Shown: positions 3,796-49,244 of the stretch, piece after piece | How positions within the stretch are numbered: the first letter of the stretch is position 1 | Layout of the letters: the number at the start of each line of letters is the position of its first letter | IMG/VR virus record: IMGVR_UViG_3300007352_000001 | Coordinates: 124,001 to 188,000 of that record | DNA length: 64,000 nucleotides | Reading direction: 5' to 3' (one strand) | Translations under genes and position numbers: made by a program | Notes under the pieces: model-generated | Told to the model about the DNA's origin: nothing | The model's input: only the letters and a program-made list of their open reading frames with translations | Database searches by the model: none

Positions 3796-3868
3796 GGCGA
3801 GATGGCAGAGTTGGTCAACGCGCCGGTCTGAAAAGCCGGACATCTCGGTTCGATTCCGAGTCTCGCCA
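3796..3868 (+). tRNA. tRNA-Phe(GAA)
   Basis: Cloverleaf GGCGAGA/TCTCGCC, anticodon loop CTGAAAA, T-loop GTTCGATTC. Confidence 0.92.
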
Positions 3869-3888
3869 CTTGTTCGTGGAAGGGTTGT

Positions 3889-3963
3889 GGTGGCTGTAGC
3901 TCAGTTGGCTAGAGCGCGTGACTGTGGCTCACGAGGTCGAGGGTTCGATTCCCTCCAGTCACC
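3889..3963 (+). tRNA. tRNA-His(GTG)
   Basis: G-1, acceptor GTGGCTG/CAGTCAC, anticodon loop CTGTGGC, discriminator C. Confidence 0.93.
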
Positions 3964-3975
3964 CTTCTTTCGGAG

Positions 3976-8705: not shown

Positions 8706-8724
8706 CGTCGTCTCCAGGAAGAAG

Positions 8725-8799
8725 AGCCCGCGGAGGGAGTCGAACCCCCGGCCCGCTGCTTACGAAGCAGCCGCTCTGGCCAGACTGAGCTACACGGGC
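8725..8799 (-). tRNA. tRNA-Thr(CGT)
   Basis: Reverse complement folds as a cloverleaf; anticodon stem GCTGC/GCAGC, loop TTCGTAA. Confidence 0.92.
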
Positions 8800-8812
8800 G
8801 TGTGAAAGGGAG

Positions 8813-8884
8813 TGGGCTCGGCGAGAGTCGAACTCGCACCACTCGGCTTAAAAGGCCGATGCTCACCAACTGAGCTACGAGCCC
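8813..8884 (-). tRNA. tRNA-Lys(TTT)
   Basis: GGGCTCG/CGAGCCC acceptor, loop CTTTTAA. Confidence 0.93.
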
Positions 8885-8942
8885 AGGGAAGGGCTCGCGT
8901 CATTTCAGCCGAGTCATCATGAGGGAAGGAAGGGGTACGCCT

Positions 8943-9029
8943 CCAAACCGCTGCCACCAGCCCGAGAACGGGAGCCTGACGCCCCGTCGCGTCGCATTAC
9001 TGCGCGCATCAGCTATCTGGTGGATTTGG
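8943..9029 (-). ncRNA. candidate structured ncRNA inside the tRNA cluster
   Basis: Nested stems CCACCAG/CTGGTGG, AGCTGATGC/GCGTCAGGCT, CGCA-GTAA-TGCG GNRA hairpin, possible pseudoknot GACGGG/CCCGTT. Confidence 0.4.
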
Positions 9030-9106
9030 CGCATCGTTCACCGTTCGGCGTTCAATCGTGCGATCAAGCAACCCTGCGCTTTGCGGCTATGAGCTTTTCG
9101 ATCCGT

Positions 9107-9182
9107 TGGGATCAAGTACGGGAGTTGAACCCGTTACCTTCTGGTTTCAGGCCAGACGCTCTACCAAATGAGCTAACTTGGG
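9107..9182 (-). tRNA. atypical tRNA-like gene, anticodon TGA (nominal Ser), short variable loop; possibly pseudo-tRNA
   Basis: D-arm AGCTCATTTGGTAGAGC, anticodon stem TCTGG/CCAGA with loop CCTGAAA, T-loop GTTCAACTC, encoded CCA, but pairs 1:72 and 2:71 mismatched. Confidence 0.7.
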
Positions 9183-27665: not shown

Positions 27666-28120
27666 TGTACCAACAAGTGCAAGCTGACCTCTGGTCGTAC
27701 CCGGCCGACTGGCGAGTCGTCACGACTAATGGCTTCACGCGCAAAGACGGCACCGCCGTCATGGGTCGCGGCATCGCGGCGCAGGCGCGCACGAAGTACC
27801 CCGAGCTGGAGCGCAAGCTCGGCTTGCAACTGCGCGTCACCGGAAACGTCGTCTACGTCTTCCCCGAGTACAAGATCATCACGTTGCCGGTGAAGCCGAC
27901 GCGTGGGCCGGACGGCACGCCCGGCTTCATGGTCGCGGCCGATCCCATCCTGATCGGGGAGAGTCTTGTACAACTCGTGCGACGGAACCTGGACGGTGTG
28001 ATCGCCATGCCGCGGCCAGGATGTGGCAACGGCAAACTGGATTGGGCCACACAGGTCAAGCCGATCTGTGACCTCGTGCTCAAAGACGACCGCTACGTGG
28101 TGGTCGATTGGGAGGAGTGA
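27665..28120 (+). CDS. macrodomain (ADP-ribose-binding/hydrolase) protein
   Basis: TTN...G.AVMGRGIA, ITLPVK, MPRPGCGNGKLDW. Confidence 0.8.
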   Translation: MYQQVQADLWSYPADWRVVTTNGFTRKDGTAVMGRGIAAQARTKYPELERKLGLQLRVTGNVVYVFPEYKIITLPVKPTRGPDGTPGFMVAADPILIGESLVQLVRRNLDGVIAMPRPGCGNGKLDWATQVKPICDLVLKDDRYVVVDWEE

Positions 28121-28123
28121 GCG

Positions 28124-29209
28124 GTGGCAGTGAAAGCGGTCAAGAAACGAAAGGCCGGCAGCACCAAAACGGCCGACGGGTTCCAGGCGTTGCTGAAAGA
28201 CCTGCGCGAGAACATGGAGGAGGGTGCAGTGCGCCTGGCCTCTGAGGGGTTCGACTCTGACGTGAAGATGTGGATCCCGACCGGGTTCACTCAGCTCGAC
28301 GTCCTGCTGAAGGGCGGGATCCCGGTTGGACGCATCGTCGAGATCTACGGCCGGGAAGGTAGTGGGAAGACGACGCTCGCTACGCAGATCATGGCGAGCT
28401 GTCAGCGCATGGGCGGCGTGGCGATCCTCCTCGACTCGGAGTCGAAGTTCTACCCCGAGCGCGCCAAGCTCATGGGCGTCGACTTGAACCAGTTGCTCAC
28501 GGTGCGCGCCAACACGGTCGAGAAGGGGTTCGCCTACATCCTGCAGATTCTGCCGAAGGCACGCGAGCACATGGCGGCTGACTTGCCGGTGGTGGTGGTG
28601 TGGGACACGATCGCCTCTGCGCCGACAGAAGCGGAGTTCGACGCGCAGACTGAAGGCGACGACCCGTTCAAGCGCGGCATGATGGAGAAGCCGCGCATCA
28701 TCAAGCAGGCGATGCGGGTCGGCGCGACACTGCTCAGCCAAACCCAAGTCTCGCTGGTGCTGATCAACCAGATCATGGAGACGCAGCACGGGGACCGGCC
28801 ACCGGGCGGCACTGGTATCCGGCACCAGACGTCAGCGCGCATTCAGATGTACCGCACCGGCGAGGAGGGGGCTGAGGTCTCGTTGCAGGCACGCATCCGC
28901 AAGCTGCAGCTCGACGGGCCGCAGTCCGGCACCGACCGCGTCGACCTCGTCATCCGCCCACACGGCGGCGCCGACCACGTCTCGATGTTGGAGTACCTCG
29001 CGACGCAGAAGGCGTGCGCCGAGATCACCAAGAGCGGCGGTTGGTACACGATCGGGTTCAACGGCACCGACCACAAGGCACAGCGCTCGACCATCGAGCA
29101 GAAGGTCATGGAAGTCGACGGCTTGTCTGACTTCTTGAAGGACCGGACAACCTTCTACATGCTCGGGATGGCTGGGTACGAGCAGTGGAAGCAGATGCAT
29201 TCGCGGTGA
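28124..29209 (+). CDS. recA: RecA/UvsX recombinase
   Basis: PTG...LD..L.GGIP.GRIVEIYGREGSGKTT, VWDTIA, LINQ. Confidence 0.93.
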   Translation: MAVKAVKKRKAGSTKTADGFQALLKDLRENMEEGAVRLASEGFDSDVKMWIPTGFTQLDVLLKGGIPVGRIVEIYGREGSGKTTLATQIMASCQRMGGVAILLDSESKFYPERAKLMGVDLNQLLTVRANTVEKGFAYILQILPKAREHMAADLPVVVVWDTIASAPTEAEFDAQTEGDDPFKRGMMEKPRIIKQAMRVGATLLSQTQVSLVLINQIMETQHGDRPPGGTGIRHQTSARIQMYRTGEEGAEVSLQARIRKLQLDGPQSGTDRVDLVIRPHGGADHVSMLEYLATQKACAEITKSGGWYTIGFNGTDHKAQRSTIEQKVMEVDGLSDFLKDRTTFYMLGMAGYEQWKQMHSR

Positions 29210-30571: not shown

Positions 30572-30643
30572 GCGGCGGTCGGTTAGTCGGTAAACCACGA
30601 GACTCCAAATCTCGGACCGGGGGTTCGATTCCCTCCCGCCGTG
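30572..30643 (+). tRNA. tRNA-Trp(CCA)
   Basis: GCGGCGG/CCGCCGT acceptor, CGAGA-CTCCAAA-TCTCG anticodon arm. Confidence 0.9.
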
Positions 30644-30685
30644 CTCTGAGGTCGCAGCTGATGATGTGGTGTGGTGGAGGTGTGG

Positions 30686-32567: not shown

Positions 32568-33506
32568 ATGCGTCGACTGTGGTGGGTAGTCGCATTCGCA
32601 TTGGTGCTGCTGTTCGGCAGCATCGTCTTCGCCGGGCCGTCGAGCAGTCGCAGCGGTGGTGGGTTCGGCAGTTCGTCGCGTAGCGGGAGCTACAGCTCGC
32701 CCTCGCGCAGTGGGAGCGGTGGATTCGGGCGTTCGGCGCCAAAGGCAGCACCACCCGCTCGCGCGCCGTCGAGTGGTGGCTTTGGATCGTCGAAGCCAGC
32801 CGCACCGTCCGCACCAAAGGCCGCACCGCCAAGCAGTGGCGGATTCGGCTACAGCTCGAAGCCGAAGCCAGCTGCACCGCCACCGGCCGCAAGTAACAGC
32901 GGCAGTGGTGGGAGTCGTAACAGCAGCGGGTGGTCAGGTGGATTCGGGTCGTCAGCCAAGTCGGCAGCCGTCGGCGCCGCGGCTGGAGCTGCTGCAGCCT
33001 CCGCAGCGGGTGGGGATTCTGGGAGCACAGCGAGTGATCCTGCCACAGCACCAGCTGCGAAGCCGTACGGTGGATTCGGCGAGTCGGCGCCCAAGGCGGT
33101 CTCGGCGCAGAAGGCCACCGACCGCGCGCTGACGCAGATGGTCGGCAAATCGGGCAAGACCTACACGACCTCGCAAGAGGCTGAGGCGGATCTGCGCGCG
33201 AAACTCGCCACGGCCAAGCTGCCGACGGAGCCCGCCGATCGTCCCGACTTCGTGCCGTCGAGTTATTCGACGTCGGGACGCAACTACACGATCATCTTCC
33301 ACGACGGCGGGTACGGGTACTGGCGCGACGATGGGTTCTGGAACCCGTTGCCGGCCGAGGCGTACATCATCCGGGCGGCGCACTTAGCGGCGTACGGCTA
33401 TCAGCCGTCGGTGGTGATCAGCGGCGGCTCGGTGATCATCTTGGTCGCCGTCTTTCTGGTCGTGGGAATCGTCATCGCAATCATCATCTACCGCATCGTG
33501 CAGTGA
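32568..33506 (+). CDS. Gly/Ser/Ala/Pro-rich membrane protein
   Basis: Signal peptide, repeated GGFG units, C-terminal TM helix. Confidence 0.75.
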   Translation: MRRLWWVVAFALVLLFGSIVFAGPSSSRSGGGFGSSSRSGSYSSPSRSGSGGFGRSAPKAAPPARAPSSGGFGSSKPAAPSAPKAAPPSSGGFGYSSKPKPAAPPPAASNSGSGGSRNSSGWSGGFGSSAKSAAVGAAAGAAAASAAGGDSGSTASDPATAPAAKPYGGFGESAPKAVSAQKATDRALTQMVGKSGKTYTTSQEAEADLRAKLATAKLPTEPADRPDFVPSSYSTSGRNYTIIFHDGGYGYWRDDGFWNPLPAEAYIIRAAHLAAYGYQPSVVISGGSVIILVAVFLVVGIVIAIIIYRIVQ

Positions 33507-33518
33507 GAGGAGGGCAAC

Positions 33519-34100
33519 GTGGCACTACGAGCAGACCAGTTCCAACAGTTCTCAGCAGGCGATCTTCTCGTCCTGCGTGACATCCATGCCATGGAGGCGA
33601 CCGGCCAGGCCGAGTGGTCGACGCCGATCAAGACCGTGCGGCGTTGGCGCTGCCAGGGCGGACAGCTTCGGTACACTCTGGCTGAGATCGCGTACGAGGA
33701 CGCGCGCCTCGCGCTGATCATCAAAGAGGTTGGGGATGCCGCCGATCTCGTGGTCGGCCGCGTCTGGTCCGAGTACGTCGCGTCGACGCCGGACACAAGC
33801 GTACTGAACCTCTGGACGCCGAACGGCCGGCACATCGACTTCAGCCCAACGATGCGCGTGCAGATCGAGAACGAGGCCGTCGACTACGACCGGCTGCCCA
33901 ACTTCCCATTCTGGGATGCGCAACTGGAAGGTACGACGGACGAACCGTCTGCGATCTGCGAATACCGCGCGACGAAGGCCGAGCCGAGTGCGTGGAATCG
34001 CAACGCGCTGGTAGAGTACTCGCCGCTGGGCGGGCTCACGACGTTGTGGCTCGGCTGGGACATCAACCCGCGCGACGTCGACATGCTCGACCAGCGCTGA
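33519..34100 (+). CDS. DUF2491/DUF4178-like protein (PspA-operon partner)
   Basis: Position before pspA; C-terminal EY...W.G..I....V.. pattern; family assignment tentative. Confidence 0.5.
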   Translation: MALRADQFQQFSAGDLLVLRDIHAMEATGQAEWSTPIKTVRRWRCQGGQLRYTLAEIAYEDARLALIIKEVGDAADLVVGRVWSEYVASTPDTSVLNLWTPNGRHIDFSPTMRVQIENEAVDYDRLPNFPFWDAQLEGTTDEPSAICEYRATKAEPSAWNRNALVEYSPLGGLTTLWLGWDINPRDVDMLDQR

Positions 34101-34127
34101 TCGCAACATCACATCAACGAGGAGGGC

Positions 34128-34838
34128 ATGGGAATGCGGCTACTCAATCGACTCAAGGACATCGTCACCGCGGTGCTCGATCAGCGCGTGCAGGAGGCCG
34201 AGTCGCAGAACGCTGGCGCGCTCGCGCAGCAAGACATCGGCCGGCTCGAAGAAGCCCTGCGCGAGTCGTCCGGCGCTGTTGCCTCACTGGGCGCCGAAGT
34301 GCAAGCACAGGCCGACCTGGAAGCGGAACTGCGCGGGGAAGTACAGCGCTGGCACGACGTCGCCAAGATCGAGGCCGAAGCCGGGCACGACGACACAGCG
34401 CGCCAGGCGCTGCAGCGCAAGCTCGACGCCGCGGCCGAACTCCAGGCGGTCTCGACCGGCTACGCGGCGTTGAAGGAACGCTTCGAGACGGCCAAGGGGC
34501 GCGTGCTGGAGAATGCCGAGCGTCTCCAGCAAGCGAAGTCGCGCGTCCGCACCGCCGTCGCGCGTGACCAGGCCGAGCAAGCAACCGCCGCGGCTGATCG
34601 CGCGTTCGGTGACCTCGGGGATCACGAAGACCTCTTCCAGCGCATCGACGTGATGGAGGATCACATCGAGCGTCGCGAGCGCACCAACGAAGAGGCGCGC
34701 AAGCTGGCCGATCAGATCGCCGGCAAGGATCTCCTCCGTGCGGCCGATCAGACGGCGCGCACGCGGGCGGTCGAGGACGAGCTGGCGGCGCTCAAGACCC
34801 CGCCGCCGGCCGCACCGGCGAGTTCACCGACTGCCTGA
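34128..34838 (+). CDS. pspA: PspA/IM30 family protein
   Basis: M.LL.RLKDIV.A.L, coiled coil, AR.AL.RK, F.RI..ME..I.R.E, VEDELAALK. Confidence 0.85.
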   Translation: MGMRLLNRLKDIVTAVLDQRVQEAESQNAGALAQQDIGRLEEALRESSGAVASLGAEVQAQADLEAELRGEVQRWHDVAKIEAEAGHDDTARQALQRKLDAAAELQAVSTGYAALKERFETAKGRVLENAERLQQAKSRVRTAVARDQAEQATAAADRAFGDLGDHEDLFQRIDVMEDHIERRERTNEEARKLADQIAGKDLLRAADQTARTRAVEDELAALKTPPPAAPASSPTA

Positions 34839-35037
34839 GCAGCAATGCTCGAAGACACTACAACCGGCGGCGCGGACCCTTCGCGCTCAGCCCTAGCTGA
34901 GTACCGTCGCCACAAGGTGACACGAGGCGATCTTCACCCGCCGCATGCGTACCAGCCGGTTGTAGAGGGGGAGGGTGGCGCATCCACCCTCCCCCGTCCT
35001 TCGGAAGGGAGTGAAACAGGACCAGCTCTTGGCCAAG
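34837..35037 (+). ncRNA. candidate omegaRNA/sgRNA-like scaffold plus guide
   Basis: GAGCA-GCAA-TGCTC; 11-bp CTACAACCGGC/GCCGGTTGTAG enclosing three hairpins; 12-bp GGGGGAGGGTGG/CCACCCTCCCCC; ends GGAAGGGAGTGAAAC. Confidence 0.45.
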
Positions 35038-36071
35038 TCAATCGCACCCAAGCCGTGCCGCTCGTGTACGTCACTGGGGAGGAGCGCAGGCAGCTGCTGC
35101 GCTACGCGTATATCGCTGCGCGGTTCGGCAACCAGCTCCTCACGTCCCAGTACGCGCAGTTCACCGCCCGACAGCAGATCGCGGCGCTCGCCGAGCAACA
35201 CCAGGTGCCTGAGAAAGAGCTGCTGAAGGCGTGGACGGTCTATCGGGACTTCGCCGACGAGCTGTCAGGCTACGTCCGCGATGCCGTGCAGCGGGAAGTG
35301 CAAGGGATCTGGAAGCGCCTTTTCAAAGACATCATGGCTGGCCGGCAGACGCTGGCCTGTTTCAGGATGCACCGGGCGCTCTCGATCCGCGGGCGCGGTG
35401 TCACGCTGTTCAAGGACCAGGACAGTGCGTACCACTTCACGTTCCGCTTCGGGCCACGGTCGGGTGCGCCGACCCAGCTCTCAGTGTACATGGACACGTT
35501 GTGCCGCAATCCGTTTCTCGAAGCGTTGCTCGACAAGCTGATCGACGGCACCACGTACGAGATCACTCACGCGACGATTCGGATCCCACGCACCGGCAAC
35601 AAGCTGAAGGTGCTGCTGGGTTACCGGAAACCGGCTGTCGCGCAGCTGGTGCATGAGACGCGAGCCTTGGTCGCGCTCGAAGCGGGCGTGCTCGTTGTGC
35701 GCTGCGGCTCGACCATGATGACGCTTGGGGACCGTGTCTACCGCCTCCGTGAGATGAAGCTCCACCTCGACGGGATCCAGCGGCGCTTGCGCGCCACGCT
35801 CAATCGTCGCAGCCGGCGTGGGGAGTATCGCCGCCAGCTCGCACACGCGCAGAGCTTCGAGGAGTGGGCGCGGACTCCACTGCATCAGCTAAGCAGTGAG
35901 ATCGTCACGTGGGCACAGCGAGCCGGGGCCGGCCAACTCGTCTATATGATGCCGAGCACGGCCGACCTGCCCTGGGCGACGCTGCATCAGCAACTGGAGT
36001 ACAAGAGCGCTGAGCACGGCATGCGGTACGAACGAAGAGAGACGAAAGTTGAAAAGTCTGACGAGCCGTAG
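34845..36071 (+). CDS. TnpB/Cas12f-like protein with degenerate RuvC (nuclease-dead); true start uncertain, possibly near 35035-35055
   Basis: DIMAGRQTLACFR, LHQLSSEIV.WA, W..L.QQLEYKSAEHGM; RuvC-I Asp and RuvC-II Glu positions not acidic; no zinc finger or RuvC-III. Confidence 0.7.
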   Translation: MLEDTTTGGADPSRSALAEYRRHKVTRGDLHPPHAYQPVVEGEGGASTLPRPSEGSETGPALGQVNRTQAVPLVYVTGEERRQLLRYAYIAARFGNQLLTSQYAQFTARQQIAALAEQHQVPEKELLKAWTVYRDFADELSGYVRDAVQREVQGIWKRLFKDIMAGRQTLACFRMHRALSIRGRGVTLFKDQDSAYHFTFRFGPRSGAPTQLSVYMDTLCRNPFLEALLDKLIDGTTYEITHATIRIPRTGNKLKVLLGYRKPAVAQLVHETRALVALEAGVLVVRCGSTMMTLGDRVYRLREMKLHLDGIQRRLRATLNRRSRRGEYRRQLAHAQSFEEWARTPLHQLSSEIVTWAQRAGAGQLVYMMPSTADLPWATLHQQLEYKSAEHGMRYERRETKVEKSDEP

Positions 36072-36125
36072 CAACAATCGTTGAGCCGGCTCGCACGGGG
36101 CGGGCCATTGTGGAAGGAGTGAGCA

Positions 36126-36737
36126 ATGATGCGGATCAAGATCGGTGAGGGTGACGAGGCCGACGACTACGGCGTCGGGTTCGGATACCAGGAGAAGCGG
36201 CGCGGCCGGACGCGGAAGCAGGGCGGAACCCCGCACTTGTCGGTCACAACGACGGCGATCGTCCAGCTGCCCAAGCGGTTCCAGTTTGCCGATGTGTTCG
36301 GCGTCGGGCCGCACCAGACGGACGAGGACGGCACTCTGCGCGGGGTCGTGACGATCCACGATGACGAGGGTGACCCGACGTTGACGGCCGAGGAACGCGC
36401 CAAGCACGCGTTCGTGGTCGAAGTCGTGCAACCGAAGGGCAAGGACGAGGCGCTCGATCGCGTCATGCTGATCGCCAGAACACGGTGCCACTCAGTGGCG
36501 GACGTCTACGATCGCGGCCGTGGCCGGCGCGGGGCGTTGCGCCGAGTGCTGACCGGGTTCAAGCAACTGCTTCCTGACGTCTATCTCGCCAAGGGCGATC
36601 GCCGCAGCGTACTCGCCAAGCAGATCTGGGCGATGTACTTCGACCGCACGCGGGACGGCGTCGAGTTTGGCATGCGCGGCCCGTTTCTGAAGACGGACAA
36701 GAAAGAGGCTGTGCTGGATCCCGCTCCTTTGGAGTGA
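36126..36737 (+). CDS. hypothetical phage protein
   Basis: SD GGAG; C...D.YDR..GR..ALRR motif. Confidence 0.65.
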   Translation: MMRIKIGEGDEADDYGVGFGYQEKRRGRTRKQGGTPHLSVTTTAIVQLPKRFQFADVFGVGPHQTDEDGTLRGVVTIHDDEGDPTLTAEERAKHAFVVEVVQPKGKDEALDRVMLIARTRCHSVADVYDRGRGRRGALRRVLTGFKQLLPDVYLAKGDRRSVLAKQIWAMYFDRTRDGVEFGMRGPFLKTDKKEAVLDPAPLE

Positions 36738-36739
36738 CC

Positions 36740-38167
36740 ATGTCCTTGAAGTACCGCGCAGAGTTGCACGGGACGAACCACTACGTGTTGCCGCGCATCG
36801 GCACGATGCGGTGCGACGTGCACGCGTTCATGTCCCCAGAGCTGTACACGATCAGCGACGAAGGCACCTGGCAACAAGCCTTCGACGCTGCGTCGTACCC
36901 GAACGTGCGCGGAGTCTACCTGATGCCCGACTGCCATCTCGGGTACGGCATCCCGGTTGGCGGTGTAGTTGTCACCGACGGCGTGATCATCCAGTCGGGG
37001 TCGGGGTACGACATCTCATGCGGTGTCATCTACATGCGCTTGCCGGGAGTCACCGCAGCCGACGTCGTTGACTGGGAGCGCCGGCTGCGATGGGTGCGGG
37101 AAGTCGAGCTGCGGGTGGCCACTGGTGTCGGCCGGCACCGCCCGAAGCTCGCCCCCAAGATCACTGGTCGGATGATCGCCGAGGTCTTGCTCCACGGTGC
37201 CAAGCCCTTGGGCGTGTCGGCCGACGTGTGCGAGCGGCAGTTCATCCAGGTCGACGAGAAGCACTTCGACTCACAGCGGGTCGAGCGCGCCATCGAGCGT
37301 GCTGGCGACCAGCTTGGCTCGGTCGGCGGCGGCAACCACTTCATCGAGCTGCAGGTGGATCGAGACACCGGTGAGGTGTGGGCGATGGTGCACTGTGGCA
37401 GCCGCGGCTTTGGTTGGCAGACGGCCAACCACTTTTTCTTCGCGGGCGCGGAAGCGCGCGGCCTGCCGAAGAACCGGCGCGAGTCGTCGTGGCTGTACGC
37501 CGACGAAGAAGTCGGGAAGCAGTATTGGGCGCATCACAACGCGGCGGCGAACTACGCGATCGCCAACCGGCACATGATCGTCGAAGGCGTGCGCGAGGCG
37601 ACGCAGGAAGTGTTCGCGGCGAGCCCAGAGGTCTACTTCGAGATCTCGCACAACCTCGTGCAAGACGAGCGCGTGCTCGTGCCTGGTGCGGACGGCTCCT
37701 ACGAGTTTGTGCGTGGGTTCGTGCACCGTAAAGGCGCGACGCGCGCCTTCCCGGCACACCACCCCGATCTCGTCGGGACGAAGTGGGAAGAGACTGGGCA
37801 CCCGTGTCTGATTCCAGGCTCGATGCTCGACGGAGCTGCGATCTTGTTCCCGACCTTCCGCACGGTGGAGAGCGGGTTCTCAGTCAACCACGGCTCGGGT
37901 CGTGCCGTGGCGCGTGGACAGGCCAAGCGAGATCTCGAACCGCTGCAAGAGGACATCGACACCGAAATGCGGACGATCCGCCGCACAGTCGGCCCCGACC
38001 GGGTCGAGATCGTGGGCATTGTTGGCAACACAGCGAAGACGCCACTCGATGAGTGCGGACACGTCTACAAGAAGCTCGACCAGGTTGTAGGATCGCTGGT
38101 TGATGCCGGCGTGGCCACCGTTAGTGCGCGACTGTATCCCGTGGCGAACTTGAAAGGGACGGACTGA
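36740..38167 (+). CDS. rtcB: RtcB RNA 3'-phosphate/5'-OH ligase
   Basis: MPDCHLGYGIPVGG, DISCG, QLGSVGGGNHFIE, HCGSRGFG, HN, HRKGAT, IPGSM, HGSGR. Confidence 0.96.
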   Translation: MSLKYRAELHGTNHYVLPRIGTMRCDVHAFMSPELYTISDEGTWQQAFDAASYPNVRGVYLMPDCHLGYGIPVGGVVVTDGVIIQSGSGYDISCGVIYMRLPGVTAADVVDWERRLRWVREVELRVATGVGRHRPKLAPKITGRMIAEVLLHGAKPLGVSADVCERQFIQVDEKHFDSQRVERAIERAGDQLGSVGGGNHFIELQVDRDTGEVWAMVHCGSRGFGWQTANHFFFAGAEARGLPKNRRESSWLYADEEVGKQYWAHHNAAANYAIANRHMIVEGVREATQEVFAASPEVYFEISHNLVQDERVLVPGADGSYEFVRGFVHRKGATRAFPAHHPDLVGTKWEETGHPCLIPGSMLDGAAILFPTFRTVESGFSVNHGSGRAVARGQAKRDLEPLQEDIDTEMRTIRRTVGPDRVEIVGIVGNTAKTPLDECGHVYKKLDQVVGSLVDAGVATVSARLYPVANLKGTD

Positions 38168-38274
38168 CGCTGGGCCTTGCTCGTGGTGGGGTGAGGTCCG
38201 GTTCTGCCCGAGGCGGTTGGTGTTGGGAAGAGCGCCAGCCGTCTCGGGTTCCACCGAGTGAAAGGAGGAGGGCG

Positions 38275-38937
38275 ATGGCTGTTCGTGATCGGGTACACCG
38301 ATTGGTCACCGGTGCGTTTCATCAGATGATCTCTGCGATCGAGAACCAGGCTCCAGATGCCGTGATGGAGCAGGCGATTCGCGAGGCTGACGAGGCAACC
38401 GAGGAAGCTCGCAGTGAGTTGGCGCAAGTGCTGACGCGACAGCATTTGGCGTCGTCGCGTATCGCACGCGATACGGACGCGCTGCGCGCACTGGACGCGC
38501 AGGTGCAGTTGGCTCTGAAGGAGAAACGAGAGGACCTCGCGCGCGAAGCAGTCGCGCGGCAACTGGACCTCGAAGCGCAACTGTCGGTCGTGCAGGAGGC
38601 GGCGGATCACGAAGCGCATGCACGCGCTGACCTCGAACGCATGATCCTCGCGCTCGATGCCCAGCGGCGAGAGATGCGCGAGGAGTTGGCAGCGTTCCGC
38701 GCTCAGCAGGACCGGGCCGTTCCAGGCGTTGACGCACCACCGATGGGTGGCGTCACGGGGACCGTCGCGGAGCAGCGGGCTCGCCGGGCGAAAGAAGTGT
38801 TCGGCGATGTCATGAGCCGGCAGACGAATCTCCCGCGGCCACTCGGGTCCACCAGCAAGCTCCAAGAGTTGGCGGACCTGGAGCGGACACATCGGATTGA
38901 CGAACGACTCGCTGCTGCGAAGGCACAGCAAGGTTAG
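38275..38937 (+). CDS. pspA: PspA/IM30 family protein (second paralog)
   Basis: R..RLV....H..IS.IE..AP..V.EQAIRE, REDLAREA..RQ, I.ERLAA.K; SD AGGAGG. Confidence 0.85.
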   Translation: MAVRDRVHRLVTGAFHQMISAIENQAPDAVMEQAIREADEATEEARSELAQVLTRQHLASSRIARDTDALRALDAQVQLALKEKREDLAREAVARQLDLEAQLSVVQEAADHEAHARADLERMILALDAQRREMREELAAFRAQQDRAVPGVDAPPMGGVTGTVAEQRARRAKEVFGDVMSRQTNLPRPLGSTSKLQELADLERTHRIDERLAAAKAQQG

Positions 38938-38939
38938 CC

Positions 38940-39626
38940 GTGACTTCCTTCACCTTCCTGCTGCAGGCGGGCGTGTGGCCGTTCACGGCAAGCCTGTCCT
39001 TGGTCGTGGTGCTCGCGATCTTGGAGTTCATGACGTACGTGGCAGGCCTTGGTGGAATCACGCATGCATTCGAGCACGCCTTTGGTGTCGATCTCGATGG
39101 CGACTTCGACATGGCGCACCCAGATTTCTCTCACGGGGGCGTCTTCGTAAAGGCCGTGAACTGGGCGCGGGTGGGAGAACTTCCACTGTCGATCTTACTG
39201 ATCACGTGGTGGTTCCTCTTCGGCATCGTGGGGGTGGGGGCACAATACGCGTCGTCGATCGTGCTTGGTGGTGCCACGATGCCGTTTTGGATCGTGGTCT
39301 GGCCAGTGATGGCCGTGTCGATTGGCGCGTACCGAGGGTGCGCGCGGATCTTTGTGCGGGTCTTGCCGACTGATGTCGAGACGTACGCGGTCGAGCCGTC
39401 GTCGTTCGTCGGAAGGACGGCAACTGTGGTCATGGGTACGGCGACCGTGACCGCCCCTGCTCAAGCTCGCTTGGTGGATCAGTACGGGAACGCGCACTAC
39501 GTCATGGTCGAGCCGAGCGATCCAGAGCAGGCGTTCGCGCCTGGTGCCACCGTGCTGCTTGTTGAACAAAACGACGCGGTATTCCGCGTTATCAACCCGC
39601 CGAGCGCACTGTTACTCGGCACGTGA
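38940..39626 (+). CDS. YqiJ/DUF1449 NfeD-like inner membrane protein
   Basis: PF..SL..V..L..LE, PL.ILL, C-terminal OB fold G.A.V..G.A....PAQARL.DQYG..HYVMVEP. Confidence 0.85.
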   Translation: MTSFTFLLQAGVWPFTASLSLVVVLAILEFMTYVAGLGGITHAFEHAFGVDLDGDFDMAHPDFSHGGVFVKAVNWARVGELPLSILLITWWFLFGIVGVGAQYASSIVLGGATMPFWIVVWPVMAVSIGAYRGCARIFVRVLPTDVETYAVEPSSFVGRTATVVMGTATVTAPAQARLVDQYGNAHYVMVEPSDPEQAFAPGATVLLVEQNDAVFRVINPPSALLLGT

Positions 39627-39639
39627 TGGGGGAGAGCTG

Positions 39640-41436
39640 ATGGAAGGTTTGATCGGAATCGGGATGGTGGTCGCAGTCTGCATGGCCGGGCTGGGTGCGA
39701 TTGCCTTCATGATGTCGCGGCTCTACGTGCGCGCCACGCCCGAGTGGGCACTGGTCCGCAGCGGCTACCGCGGCAAGAAGGTTGTGATCGACGGCGGGTG
39801 CTTCGTCCTGCCGGTCTACCACGAGATCCAGCGGGTCAACATGAAGACGGTGAAGCTCGCCGTCACGCGCCAGCAGCGGGACTCGTTGATCACCAAGGAT
39901 CGGCTGCGCGTCGATGTCATCGTGGAGTTCTACGTCCGCGCCAAGCCGGACGCGACGGCGATCCCGGAAGCGGCTCGGACGCTCGGGGAGCGCACCGCCG
40001 ACCAAGCGGCGCTCAAGGATCTCATCGAGGGCAAAGCGGTCGGCGTGCTGCGTGCGGTTGCGGCGCGCATGACGATGGCAGAGCTGCACGAGGACCGGGC
40101 GAAGTTCGAGCAGGAAGTGCTGAACGGCGTGCAGAAGGACCTGACGAAGAACGGCCTCGAACTGGAGTCGTCGGCGATGACGCACTTCAACCAGACGGCC
40201 AAAGAGTTCTTTGTCGCCGAGAACGCCTTTGACGCCGAAGGGCTCGCAATGCTCACCGCTGCGGTCGAGCAGCGTCGGCAAGAGGTGAACAACATCGAGG
40301 TGACCACGCGCGTGGCGATCGAGACGCGCAATCTCGAAGGGCAGCGGCGATCGTTGCAACTCGCGCAGGATACGCAGGAGGCGATGCTGACTCAGCAGCT
40401 CGCCATCGAGACCGCCACTGCGCAGCGCAAACGTGAGATCGCACAACAGCAGGCAGAGCAGGATCGGCTGGCGCAAGAGGCGCAGATCGCCGCGCAACAG
40501 CAAGTGCAGCTGGCGTCGGTCGAAGCCGAACGGACTGTGCAAGAGGCGAAGGCGCAACAGCACGCCGCCGTGCAACAGGCGCAGATCGCTTCAGAGCGGG
40601 CGGTGAAGGTGGCCGACGAACAGCGCCAGCGTGATGTGGCGGTGGCGGCTGAGGAACGTCAGCGTGACGTGGAAGTGGCCAAACAGGAGCGCAACATCAA
40701 GGTGCAGACCAAGAGCGAGGAGCTGTCGGGTGCCACGGCCAGTGCTGAACGCGCTCGTGCCGAGGCGGTCGTAGCCGAGCAGCAGGTCATCACGGCCCAA
40801 GCGGTGGCCTCCGCGGATCGTGAGAAGCAAGTGGCGGTGATCGCGGCTGAGCGCGAGGCACAGCAGGGGGCGGTCGGCCTGGTGGTCAACGCCAAGGCGC
40901 ATGAGGATGCCGCCGCACACGAGGCCGCAGCTGTCATGGTGAGAGCGACGGCGGATACCGACGCCAAGCGCCTCGCCCTGGAGATCGCGGAGCGTGACTT
41001 CGCGGTCCGCGCCACGGGCACGCGGCTCTTGCACGAGTCCGAGAACGTGCTCGGGCAGTCGGCGATGGACTTGCGGCTGCGCCTGGCCCTGGTCGAGCAC
41101 GCCGCGGCGATGATCACTGCGGCCGGCAAGCCGGTCGAGCACATCAAGGATCTGCGGGTCATTGCCGTGCAGGGCATTCCGGGGCTGGCGGGGCCGTTGC
41201 CGGTGAACGGCGACGGCTCTACCGTTGCCAACGGCACTGGGCACGACGCCGGATTGCCCGACCAGATCGTCAATGCGGCCCTGCGTCACCAGGCGCTCGC
41301 GCCGCTGGTTGGGCTGTTGATGGGGGAGATCGGCATCGACCCCACGACCATGAATGGCATTGCTCGCCCTCTGACTGACATGGCGGTGGCGCGGCCCGCC
41401 CACCCAGCGAACGGAGATGCCCGAGCGTCGAGCTAA
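39640..41436 (+). CDS. flotillin/SPFH protein (YqiK-like)
   Basis: N-terminal TM, LITKDRLRVDV..EFYVR, DL.KNGLELES..MT..NQT, FDAEGL, AE-rich coiled coil. Confidence 0.92.
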   Translation: MEGLIGIGMVVAVCMAGLGAIAFMMSRLYVRATPEWALVRSGYRGKKVVIDGGCFVLPVYHEIQRVNMKTVKLAVTRQQRDSLITKDRLRVDVIVEFYVRAKPDATAIPEAARTLGERTADQAALKDLIEGKAVGVLRAVAARMTMAELHEDRAKFEQEVLNGVQKDLTKNGLELESSAMTHFNQTAKEFFVAENAFDAEGLAMLTAAVEQRRQEVNNIEVTTRVAIETRNLEGQRRSLQLAQDTQEAMLTQQLAIETATAQRKREIAQQQAEQDRLAQEAQIAAQQQVQLASVEAERTVQEAKAQQHAAVQQAQIASERAVKVADEQRQRDVAVAAEERQRDVEVAKQERNIKVQTKSEELSGATASAERARAEAVVAEQQVITAQAVASADREKQVAVIAAEREAQQGAVGLVVNAKAHEDAAAHEAAAVMVRATADTDAKRLALEIAERDFAVRATGTRLLHESENVLGQSAMDLRLRLALVEHAAAMITAAGKPVEHIKDLRVIAVQGIPGLAGPLPVNGDGSTVANGTGHDAGLPDQIVNAALRHQALAPLVGLLMGEIGIDPTTMNGIARPLTDMAVARPAHPANGDARASS

Positions 41437-45144: not shown

Positions 45145-45297
45145 ATGGCGGAAGATCGACTCGTCGAGATCCGCGACGAGAAGGACCAGCTCGTGGGCTA
45201 TCGGTGCCCTGTCTGCAGTCGGTACTTCGGACTGCAGGAGCAGGTCCAGGCGCAAGGGTGCCTGGCCTCGCATCGCGAGCTGCTTGTCGAAGGCTGA
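45145..45297 (+). CDS. small Zn-finger protein (50 aa)
   Basis: Hand translation MAEDRLVEIRDEKDQLVGYRCPVCS...C..SH; SD GAGGAGG. Confidence 0.55.
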   Translation: MAEDRLVEIRDEKDQLVGYRCPVCSRYFGLQEQVQAQGCLASHRELLVEG

Positions 45298-49090: not shown

Positions 49091-49179
49091 GGGACAGTGG
49101 CCGAGTCCGGCTGAAGGCACCAGTCTCGAAAACTGGCGACGGCGCAAGTCGTCCGAGCGTTCAAATCGCTCCTGTCCCG
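49091..49179 (+). tRNA. tRNA-Ser(CGA)
   Basis: GGGACAG/CTGTCCC acceptor, loop CTCGAAA, long variable arm GACGGC-GCAA-GTCGTC. Confidence 0.93.
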
Positions 49180-49244
49180 CCTTCCCAGGACCGGGAGGAG
49201 TCCCACGGGCTCCTCCCGTGTCCAACCTGGCGACGAGGGTGGTG

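What the first reader, a model, noticed from the sequence alone, without database searches (positions are those of the whole stretch)
34837..35037. Candidate single-guide RNA directly upstream of the dead TnpB, ending in a CRISPR-repeat-like GGAGTGAAAC
Seen: about 180 nt are almost fully base-pairable. There is a GNRA hairpin (34837-34850), an 11-bp stem (34858-34868/34955-34965) enclosing three hairpins, and a perfect 12-bp stem (34967-34978/34984-34995). These are followed by CCTT-CGG-AAGG-GAGTGAAAC (ends 35017). Known: many CRISPR repeats end in GAAAC-like sequence, and some dCas12f/TldR guide RNAs lie upstream of the gene. Inference: a fused scaffold plus one guide, AGGACCAGCTCTTGGCCAAG (35018-35037), probably targeting host DNA since no full match was seen in this window. 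The ORF's first ~65 low-complexity residues may then be spurious.
Basis: partly seen in the sequence, partly recalled or inferred. Interest (0 to 1): 0.82.

Follow-up and report, generated by a model that had tools for sequence, protein, structure and literature searches.

The report
Conserved RNA beside dead Cas12f-like gene
A structured RNA of about 110 nt, kept by compensatory base changes in 18 of 19 related loci, sits at the 5' end (often inside the reading frame) of a phage gene for a nuclease-dead Cas12f/TnpB-like protein; it is most likely that protein's RNA partner, but the proposed 20-nt guide and CRISPR-like repeat end are not supported.

Summary
The downstream ORF is a RuvC-dead, C-terminally truncated Cas12f/TnpB-fold protein. 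It belongs to an unannotated family known only from metagenomes (93 relatives), found mostly on phage-like contigs plus a bacterial branch.

The core of the finding (34858-34965) is a conserved RNA module: closing stem P1, a short stem P4, variable hairpins, and a near-invariant hairpin P3 followed by GCAUR. It occurs in 18 of 19 loci that carry the gene. Covariation is strong: 95% of cells paired against 59% in shuffles, and 18 of 19 pairs change on both sides.

P3 is read in three different reading frames, so the RNA is what is selected, not a peptide. Yet in 9 of 15 loci an in-frame start codon lies just 5' of P1 and the frame stays open through the module.

The part after 34965 has no sequence counterpart in relatives. 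GGAGTGA is this phage's usual ribosome-binding motif. The 20-mer has no target in the window or in 185,000 genomes. Published TldR and dCas12f guide RNAs lie downstream of their genes, not upstream.

Best reading: this is the protein's cognate scaffold RNA, carried in its own mRNA. Where the guide is, or whether there is one, is unresolved.

The parts
34837..34850 (+). Small 5' hairpin (GAGCA-GCAA-TGCTC). It holds the stop codon of the upstream PspA-like gene (34836-34838) and the in-frame ATG at 34845.
   Evidence: Sequence and MFE fold. Comparable 5-bp hairpins lie 4-7 nt 5' of P1 in L021, L013 and L016, seen by eye and not tested statistically.
34845..36071 (+). Full ORF (408 codons) from the ATG just 5' of P1, through the RNA module, into the Cas12f/TnpB-like protein.
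   Evidence: The only in-frame starts upstream of the conserved R codon (35043) are GTG 34917, inside the module, and ATG 34845. The same layout, start 3-24 nt 5' of P1 with an open frame, is seen in 9 of 15 loci in the gene frame and in 0 and 1 of 15 in the other frames.
34858..34965 (+). Conserved RNA core. P1 is 34858-34868 / 34955-34965. A weak P4 lies around 34869-34874 / 34948-34953, with an ambiguous register. Variable hairpins occupy about 34885-34921. P3 is 34926-34930 / 34938-34942 with loop UCUUCAC (34931-34937), followed by GCAUG (34943-34947).
   Evidence: CM R2 gives 56.3 bits, E 1.6e-11. The module is aligned with 16 copies from relatives (A13). Covariation: 95.1% of cells paired against 59.1% in shuffles, 18 of 19 pairs with changes on both sides, slide controls 35-47%. 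RNAalifold independently predicts P1, P4 and P3.
34967..34995 (+). Perfect 12-bp GC-rich hairpin directly 3' of P1, with no U-tract. It is specific to this lineage in sequence.
   Evidence: -31.9 kcal/mol together with the next hairpin, z -3.3. Analogous strong hairpins with unrelated sequence follow the module in L021 and L006. It was not flagged as terminator-like by the consensus scan.
34998..35008 (+). Mini-hairpin CCTT-CGG-AAGG.
   Evidence: Not conserved in relatives.
35008..35017 (+). GGAGTGAAAC, a Shine-Dalgarno-like motif.
   Evidence: GGAGTGA precedes the start codons of the ORFs at 28124, 36126 and 36741 in this window. Here no ATG, GTG or TTG follows in the gene frame before 35055.
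35018..35037 (+). No evidence for guide function.
   Evidence: Unique in the window at up to 3 mismatches. The best partial match is an 11-nt seed at 45182, at chance level. The 18-mer hits in 185,579 genomes are scattered. There is no homologous segment in relatives.
35043..36071 (+). Conserved body of the nuclease-dead, C-terminally truncated Cas12f/TnpB-fold protein. It starts at the R of R-T-Q-A-V-P-L.
   Evidence: NCBIfam guided_TnpB E 1.7e-8, covering profile positions 5-338 of 389. 93 relatives by HMMER. AF2 pLDDT 90. Foldseek: AsCas12f E 1.4e-14, dCas12f 9n9m/9n9c about 5e-13, TnpB 8h1j 9e-7. Family profile against PDB: Cas12f 5e-13. RuvC-I D and RuvC-II E are not conserved, and there is no zinc-finger or RuvC-III segment.

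Best explanation
Window 34858-34965, with lineage-specific hairpins extending it to about 35008, encodes a conserved multi-helix RNA. It is most likely the cognate RNA partner, an omegaRNA/gRNA-type scaffold, of the nuclease-dead Cas12f/TnpB-like protein encoded on the same strand immediately 3'.

Shown:
- The RNA structure is under purifying selection with compensatory changes.
- It is physically linked to this gene family in 18 of 19 loci.
- It lies on the sense strand (many G-U pairs).
- It is usually inside the 5' end of the gene's own reading frame.

Inferred:
- The RNA is transcribed as the 5' part of the gene's mRNA.
- The protein, which keeps the WED/REC/RuvC fold that binds scaffold RNA in every characterised relative, binds it to form a ribonucleoprotein.
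- Because the start codon or ribosome-binding site abuts P1 in most loci, the same binding would also throttle translation of the protein's own mRNA (autoregulation).

Open: whether the particle then uses an adjacent segment as a guide for DNA binding, as TldR and dCas12f do, and which segment that would be.
For: Protein identity and loss of catalysis.

RNA conservation:
- Hand-found motif and closing stems in 15 loci.
- CM R1/R2 hits of 32-75 bits in 17 copies.
- Covariation 95% against 59% paired, 18 of 19 pairs with double changes, slide controls 35-47%.
- Independent RNAalifold agreement.

RNA, not peptide:
- P3 lies in all three frames relative to the gene.
- L014 and L017 are 92% identical yet differ by 5 compensatory double changes inside the module. 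The encoded peptide differs at 10 of 29 residues, against 1 of 48 in the adjacent conserved protein.

Trans-acting potential:
- A second, standalone copy lies 3.2 kb away in L011/L061.
- In L021 the module is separated from the gene by a strong hairpin and a 113-aa ORF.
- In L002 the module sits in-frame in an internal loop of the gene.

So linkage to the gene is kept while position varies. The module size (74-125 nt) is in the range of published dCas12f gRNAs (85-105 nt in all) and the TldR scaffold (about 97 nt). No other conserved partner gene exists.

Start-codon adjacency.
Against: - No binding or expression data. No RNA run was listed for the RNA region. The one run found for the wider stretch, labelled RNA but probably DNA, gave only fragmentary low-depth contigs.
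- No guide-target pair was found anywhere.
- In all characterised TnpB/Cas12f/TldR/dCas12f systems the RNA is 3' of the gene with a free 3' guide. Here the 3' flank is mostly coding sequence or a ribosome-binding site.
- Close pairs show no hypervariable flank.
- Only one copy in the 64-kb window, and only one strict P3 motif in the whole 241-kb contig.
- No sequence or structure similarity to a known omegaRNA or gRNA could be tested, because none is in Rfam and the papers' supplements are not held.
Confidence: 0.6

Rival explanations
1. Purely cis-acting leader or operator. The module is a translational control element of the gene's own mRNA, bound by the protein or simply sequestering the start region, with no trans role and no guide.
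For: - A start codon or ribosome-binding site lies within 3-24 nt of P1 in most loci, and inside P1/P4 in L007 and L015.
- In the bacterial branch the gene's ATG lies 19-23 nt after the 3' end of P1. In L009/L010 a 6-codon uORF overlaps the main ATG.
- No target was found for any flank.
- Flanks are not hypervariable.
Against: - The internal in-frame copy in L002 cannot control initiation.
- The standalone copy in L061 (8370-8464) is not next to the gene.
- In L021 the copy is separated from the gene by a hairpin and an ORF.
- A protein of this fold with an RNA used only for self-control would have no evident output function.
Confidence: 0.2
2. The RNA is a single-guide RNA whose scaffold runs 34837-35017 and ends in a CRISPR-repeat-like GGAGTGAAAC, followed by a 20-nt guide (35018-35037) that targets host DNA.
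For: - The whole stretch folds exceptionally well.
- The 3' hairpins are more stable than shuffles.
- Analogous extra hairpins follow the core in L021 and L006.
- Guides of this protein superfamily are 3' of the scaffold.
- The 20-mer is unique in the window.
Against: - The 3' extension and GTGAAAC are absent from relatives.
- GGAGTGA is the phage's ribosome-binding motif.
- The segment lies inside an ORF that family comparison suggests is translated.
- No target in the window, and only chance-like scattered 18-mer hits in 185,579 genomes.
- No CRISPR array or repeat in the window.
Confidence: 0.07
3. Another kind of RNA element unrelated to the protein's function. Candidates are a small ribozyme or intron-like insert, a tRNA-like or Y-RNA-like substrate linked to the nearby RtcB ligase, or a relic of a transposon end.
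For: - RtcB lies 700 nt downstream of the gene in the window.
- The module can sit inside an ORF (L002), as mobile inserts do.
- The ancestors of the protein are transposon genes.
Against: - No Rfam family matches at E up to 1.
- RtcB is absent from all other loci, while the Cas12f-like gene is always present.
- There are one or two copies per contig, with divergent sequence and compensatory changes, which is not MITE-like.
- The reading frame is preserved through the module, which an excised intron would not require.
- G-U pairs indicate RNA-level selection on the sense strand, not DNA-level selection.
Confidence: 0.06
4. No functional RNA. The fold is a by-product of GC-rich coding sequence for an N-terminal extension.
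For: - GC is 68% here.
- The frame is open.
- LHPPH-like peptides recur in several relatives.
Against: - The conserved hairpin is read in three different frames.
- The peptide evolves fast while base pairs are kept.
- The module also occurs untranslated: L009 and L011 have in-frame stops inside it, and L021 and the second L061 copy are non-coding.
- Covariation statistics.
Confidence: 0.02

Closest known systems
TldR: TnpB-like nuclease-dead repressors with their gRNA (Wiegand et al., bioRxiv 10.1101/2023.11.30.569447)
   Same: - Small TnpB-fold protein with an inactivated RuvC triad and a C-terminal truncation.
- Some members are phage- or prophage-encoded.
- A structured RNA of about 100 nt is encoded next to the gene on the same strand.
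   Different: - The TldR gRNA lies downstream of, or overlapping, the 3' end of the gene and has a free 16-nt 3' guide that matches a host promoter. Here the RNA is at or inside the 5' end of the ORF, and no guide or target could be identified.
- There is no fliC or oppF association.
- The protein is closer to Cas12f than to TnpB in fold and profile searches.
dCas12f-sigmaE RNA-guided transcription activators, and the non-rpoE dCas12f cluster near CRISPR arrays and RND efflux genes (PMC13472631)
   Same: - Nuclease-dead, C-terminally truncated Cas12f fold. PDB 9n9c and 9n9m are among the top structural matches, and 9n9c matches the family profile at E 5e-7.
- Single-transcript scaffold RNA of comparable size.
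- The bacterial branch of this family sits next to RND efflux operons. The paper mentions efflux promoters as predicted targets of the non-rpoE dCas12f cluster.
   Different: - No rpoE or HTH partner.
- Their gRNAs are immediately downstream of dcas12f.
- No CRISPR array here.
- No match of module flanks to the efflux promoter region.
- Sequence relation to 9n9c is distant.
- The window's member is in a 241-kb phage contig.
Canonical TnpB omegaRNA (IS200/IS605), which overlaps the 3' end of tnpB
   Same: The structured partner RNA is embedded in the protein's own coding sequence and transcribed with it (dual-coded region).
   Different: - Opposite end of the gene.
- The protein is catalytically dead.
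- No transposon ends or TnpA were seen.
- The guide boundary at a transposon end does not exist here.
IscB/IsrB omegaRNA, encoded upstream of the gene with a 5' guide (own knowledge, not tested)
   Same: The RNA is encoded 5' of the effector gene on the same strand.
   Different: The protein here has a Cas12f/TnpB fold, not an IscB fold. No variable 5' segment was demonstrated.
Phage translational operators bound by their own gene product, such as T4 gp32, gp43 and RegA (own knowledge)
   Same: A structured element overlaps the translation start of the gene whose product could bind it.
   Different: Those operators are short hairpins or pseudoknots, not a 75-125 nt multi-helix RNA with a standalone second copy and an internal in-frame copy.

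Membership tests
TldR (TnpB-like nuclease-dead repressor + gRNA) | TnpB/Cas12-type WED-REC-RuvC fold | tested here: met
   NCBIfam guided_TnpB E 1.7e-8. AF2 model pLDDT 90. Foldseek hits to Cas12f, dCas12f and TnpB at E 1e-14 to 1e-6.
TldR (TnpB-like nuclease-dead repressor + gRNA) | RuvC catalytic residues lost and/or the C-terminal zinc-finger and RuvC-III segment truncated | tested here: met
   The family alignment has no conserved D or E at the RuvC-I and RuvC-II positions (window: M after the W/Y position). All members end shortly after the YK..E.GI segment. The profile match stops at position 338 of 389.
TldR (TnpB-like nuclease-dead repressor + gRNA) | gRNA scaffold encoded downstream of, or overlapping, the 3' end of the gene, with a 3' guide | tested here: not met
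   The conserved RNA is 5' of or inside the 5' end of the ORF. Downstream genes abut or overlap the stop codon in several loci, and nothing downstream is conserved.
TldR (TnpB-like nuclease-dead repressor + gRNA) | Guide complementary to a promoter target with a TAM, and association with fliC or oppF | tested here: not met
   No target was found. Neighbours are PspA-like and RtcB in the window, replication genes in the phage-like loci, and RND efflux and Usp in the bacterial loci. The absence of a target is limited by the unknown host.
dCas12f-sigmaE system | Operon with an rpoE (sigmaE) gene and usually an HTH gene | tested here: not met
   None of the window neighbours scanned against Pfam, nor the precomputed Pfam lists for the genes called in 13 fetched loci, contains a sigma factor.
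dCas12f-sigmaE system | 85-105 nt gRNA immediately downstream of dcas12f, with a 14-16 nt 3' guide | tested here: not met
   The RNA is upstream of or within the ORF. Its size is similar (74-125 nt).
Non-rpoE dCas12f cluster near CRISPR arrays and efflux genes (PMC13472631, Extended Data Fig. 1) | Neighbouring CRISPR array, with gRNA predicted to target an RND efflux promoter | tested here: inconclusive
   RND efflux synteny is present in L061, L062 and L063 but not in the window. No array in L061 or in the window. No flank-to-promoter match in L062:1766-2480.
Canonical TnpB-omegaRNA (IS200/IS605) | Intact RuvC D-E-D triad, omegaRNA at the 3' end, transposon ends and TnpA | tested here: not met
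   The triad and C-terminus are lost and the RNA is at the 5' end. No TnpA (Y1 transposase) family appears in the Pfam lists of the fetched loci. Transposon ends were not searched for.
Any curated Rfam family | Covariance-model match | tested here: not met
   cmscan of 33000-38000 at E up to 1 returned only a chance SAM_alpha fragment at 34694-34721 on the minus strand.
CRISPR repeat or array | Repeated units separated by spacers; the repeat end GTGAAAC shared by copies | tested here: not met
   The number of GGGAGTGAAAC-like matches equals chance (13 against 15.3 expected). No tandem or direct repeat array.

The most novel reading that the evidence does not exclude
The scaffold RNA is deliberately embedded in the 5' coding region, so that the ribonucleoprotein's 'guide' is the adjoining stretch of its own mRNA. 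The dead Cas12f-like protein would then be guided back to its own locus, or to the homologous locus of a co-infecting relative, and form an R-loop there. The R-loop would act as a self-limiting transcriptional roadblock. In phages, where several loci lie among replication genes (primase-helicase, DnaB, SSB, DNA polymerase), it could instead act as an RNA-guided origin-opening or replication-control device.
Probability: 0.1. Interest if true: 0.85.

Novelty: new variant of a known kind. Interest (0 to 1): 0.62.

Why it matters
Nuclease-dead TnpB/Cas12f descendants (TldR, dCas12f) are a newly recognised class of natural RNA-guided transcription factors. All described so far carry their guide RNA 3' of the gene.

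This family differs in several ways:
- It is unannotated, known only from metagenomes and largely viral.
- It has no relative in 50,697 GenBank phage records.
- Its scaffold RNA has no curated Rfam match.
- The RNA is placed at, and often translated as part of, the 5' end of the gene, with exceptionally clear covariation.

If the RNA is the protein's partner, three things follow:
- The known architectures of such systems are extended.
- It gives a compact (about 340 aa plus about 100 nt) candidate programmable DNA binder.
- It offers a tractable case of one sequence coding both a protein segment and a folded RNA, with built-in autoregulation.

It also shows that such proteins occur in jumbo phages, next to replication and RNA-repair genes.

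Tried and rejected
1. Word-based protein search and IMG/VR search with the single protein found only the window itself. A genome-contig search with the 11-sequence alignment found nothing.
2. A P3-motif scan of IMG/VR returned only the window's contig, L007's contig and three chance hits inside HNH and other genes.
3. My own loose descriptor scan for extra copies in the window was uninformative. The covariance model with filters off then showed a single copy.
4. MAFFT alignments of the modules were misaligned at both ends. I replaced them with CM-based alignments seeded from two sequences.
5. Target searches found nothing above chance:
   - the 20-mer and all 16-mers of 34800-35060 against the window;
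   - the 18-mer against 185,579 genomes;
   - flanks of both L011/L061 copies against 7 and 18 kb;
   - the L062 flank against the RND promoter region.
6. Search for a hypervariable guide-like flank in close pairs. L009 and L010 diverge evenly around the module and less inside it. In L014 and L017 the differences fall in the stems, not in the flanks.
7. Expression: one run labelled RNA held only fragmentary low-depth contigs and is probably DNA.
8. A P3-loop pseudoknot with GUGAA-like flank motifs was seen by eye in about half the loci. I did not test it formally and judged it compatible with chance.
9. Link to RtcB, Y-RNA or tRNA-like elements: rejected, because RtcB is absent from all other loci.
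10. Supplements holding published gRNA sequences are not held, so no direct scaffold comparison was possible.
Full report
**Observation.** The sequence at 34837-35037 is as described. It contains:
- a GNRA-type hairpin at 34837-34850;
- an 11-bp closing stem, 34858-34868 / 34955-34965, around several hairpins;
- a perfect 12-bp stem, 34967-34978 / 34984-34995;
- a CCTT-CGG-AAGG mini-hairpin at 34998-35008;
- GAGTGAAAC ending at 35017.

Folded as RNA, the + strand of 34830-45 reaches -100 kcal/mol against -78.3 +/- 4.2 for shuffles (z -5.2). The - strand reaches only z -2.4. No Rfam family matches.

**Surroundings.** The window is part of a 241-kb IMG/VR contig. It carries 7 tRNA genes and has about 65% GC. 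The structured stretch lies between a PspA-like gene (34128-34838) and a 408-codon ORF (34845-36071). After that ORF come an unknown 203-aa ORF and RtcB.

**The protein.**
- From residue ~74 the ORF matches NCBIfam guided_TnpB (E 1.7e-8, profile positions 5-338 of 389) and a PHROG transposase family.
- HMMER against 1.84 billion representatives finds 93 relatives of 330-420 aa.
- An AlphaFold model built on 27 of them has pLDDT 90.
- Its best structural matches are Cas12f (8j12, E 1.4e-14), nuclease-dead Cas12f (9n9m/9n9c, ~5e-13) and TnpB (8h1j, 9e-7). The family profile hits Cas12f chains at 5e-13 and dCas12f at 5e-7.
- The alignment has no conserved acidic residue at the RuvC-I or RuvC-II positions. 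Every member ends before the zinc-finger and RuvC-III segment.

So 'dead TnpB' is right, and the protein is somewhat closer to Cas12f. Pfam does not recognise the family. It has no tblastn match in 50,697 GenBank phage records. Its nearest ESM-Atlas cluster is an unnamed, mostly viral one.

**Gene neighbourhoods.** Phage-like contexts hold Prim-Pol/helicase, SSB, DnaB, DNA polymerase A or Mu Gam, and some contigs are of jumbo size. A bacterial branch lies directly after RND efflux operons and before a Usp gene.

**The RNA is conserved.** Upstream regions of relatives share a near-invariant hairpin, GA-GGCNN-UCUUCAC-NNGCC-GCAUR, whose stem covaries. This hairpin is enclosed by a long closing stem of unrelated sequence in every locus.

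I seeded a covariance model from two loci and rebuilt it from 12. It recovers 17 copies at 32-75 bits, including the window at 56.3 bits, plus L003/L004 with filters off. In all, 18 of 19 loci that carry the gene have the module.

On the 17-copy alignment:
- 95.1% of cells form standard pairs, against 59.1% in shuffles and 35-47% when partners are slid.
- 18 of 19 pairs show changes on both sides.
- RNAalifold independently predicts P1, P4 and P3.
- Frequent G-U pairs fix the strand as that of the gene.

The alignment was fitted to the model, which inflates such counts. However, the stems had first been found by hand without a model.

The consensus is: P1 (8-18 bp), P4 (~4 bp), AACCC, zero to three variable hairpins, GA, P3 (5 bp, 7-nt loop), GCAUR, P4', P1'. 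In the window this is 34858-34965.

That criterion is not met, for three reasons:
- P3 lies in all three frames relative to the gene. It is translated as G-L-H-P-P-H, E-A-V-F-T-V-P-H or E-T-R-T-S-P-A-E in different read-through members.
- In other loci the module is interrupted by in-frame stops or is non-coding.
- L014 and L017 are 92% identical but differ by five compensatory double changes in the module. The encoded peptide differs at 10 of 29 residues, while the adjacent conserved protein differs at 1 of 48.

**But the module is usually translated.** The conserved N-terminus R-T-x-x-V-P-L starts at 35043. That is upstream of the gene-caller's GTG at 35055. No in-frame start exists between 34917 and 35043.

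In 9 of 15 independent loci an ATG, GTG or TTG lies 3-24 nt 5' of P1 in the gene frame, and the frame stays open through the module. The other two frames give 0 of 15 and 1 of 15. In the window this start is ATG 34845, 6 nt after the PspA-like stop. The first ~66 codons are therefore probably real, dual-coded sequence and not a spurious extension.

**Position varies, linkage does not.**
- In L002 the module is inserted in-frame in a surface loop between the WED and RuvC parts.
- In L021 it lies ~400 nt upstream, followed by an 11-15 bp GC hairpin and a 113-aa ORF.
- In L011/L061 a second, standalone copy lies 3.2 kb downstream of the gene.

No other gene is conserved next to the family. This pattern favours a functional protein-RNA pair over a mere initiation-control element, although the abutting start codons make an additional autoregulatory role likely.

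- The 12-bp hairpin, the mini-hairpin and GGAGTGAAAC have no sequence counterpart in relatives. L021 and L006 do have strong, unrelated hairpins at the same place, so a 3' hairpin may be a sub-family feature.
- GGAGTGA is the ribosome-binding motif of at least three long ORFs in this window. That explains the 'repeat-like' look.
- There is no CRISPR array or repeat.
- The 20-mer is unique in the window. Partial matches are at chance level.
- Its 18-mer gives 31 hits scattered over unrelated phyla in 185,579 genomes, about the number expected by chance.
- In most relatives P1 closes 6-29 nt before the conserved coding sequence, so a free 3' guide does not fit.
- No flank of any copy matched a plausible target, including the RND promoter region in L062.
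- Close pairs show no hypervariable flank.

**Expression.** No RNA run was listed for the RNA region. The single run found for the wider 3-kb stretch holds only fragmentary, probably DNA-derived contigs.

**Conclusion.** The finding is a real, strongly supported structured RNA that belongs with a phage-borne nuclease-dead Cas12f/TnpB-like gene. It is most likely the protein's scaffold RNA, carried in its own mRNA (confidence ~0.6). A purely cis-regulatory role is the main rival (~0.2).

Compared with TldR and dCas12f, this is a new variant. It shares the protein type and the RNA size. It differs in having a scaffold with no curated Rfam match, in the RNA's 5' and ORF-embedded placement, and in having no identifiable guide yet.

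Noticed in passing
L061:1-6307; L062:2481-13492; L063: The bacterial branch of the family has conserved synteny. An RND efflux operon (ACR_tran, membrane-fusion protein, OEP) is followed by the RNA module, the dead Cas12f-like gene and then a Usp gene. A published note (PMC13472631, Extended Data Fig. 1) says some non-rpoE dCas12f guides target RND efflux promoters. I found no match of the module's 3' flank to L062:1766-2480.
   Followed up: partly
L002:1384-1471: The RNA module is inserted in-frame inside the Cas12f-like ORF (residues ~197-226 of P0002), between the WED and RuvC parts, instead of at the 5' end. It scores 66 bits with model R2.
   Followed up: partly
L061:8370-8464 (= L011:6095-6189): A second, standalone copy of the module (44 bits) lies 3.2 kb downstream of the gene-linked copy. 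It has different P1, variable region and flanks, and a TATAAT hexamer sits ~60 nt upstream. No further copy was found in 18 kb.
   Followed up: partly
L010:2956-2976 (L062:11817-11837); same in L009: The 18-nt spacer between P1 and the gene start holds a 6-codon mini-ORF (ATG ATC GAG AAG TGC GTA TGA). Its stop overlaps the gene's ATG, and its first codons resemble the gene's own (ATG AAC GAG AAG). This may be a coupling device.
   Followed up: no
window 35008-35014, 28114-28120, 36116-36122, 36731-36737: GGAGTGA recurs as the ribosome-binding motif of this phage. At 35008 it is not followed by any canonical start codon in the gene frame, so it may be a vestigial or internal Shine-Dalgarno sequence.
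   Followed up: partly
window 34425-34471 (+): Second-best hit of RNA model R2 in the window (19 bits, E 0.037), inside the PspA-like gene ~400 nt upstream of the real module. Probably chance.
   Followed up: no
window 3796-3964, 8724-9182, 30572-30644, 49091-49181; 36734-38167: The phage window carries seven tRNA genes (Phe, His, Thr, Lys, Ser x2, Trp) and an RtcB RNA ligase (Pfam E 7e-81). This is a tRNA supply-and-repair set typical of large phages.
   Followed up: no
window 34128-34838 and 38191-38937: A PspA/IM30-like protein (Pfam E 5e-12) is encoded just upstream of the RNA. A second coiled-coil ORF of similar size lies after RtcB and looked similar by eye, but I did not scan it.
   Followed up: no
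window 35034-35055 vs 39687-39708 (minus strand): A 12-nt exact match (16-mer with 1 mismatch) links the stretch just 5' of the conserved N-terminal codons to the antisense of the start region of the ORF 39544-41436. About 0.4 such 16-mer hits are expected by chance over the scan.
   Followed up: partly
L018:1-490: This is the only family locus without a detectable module, in the 465 nt available upstream or in the gene. Its protein (P0003) has a ~45-residue insertion in the helical region instead.
   Followed up: no
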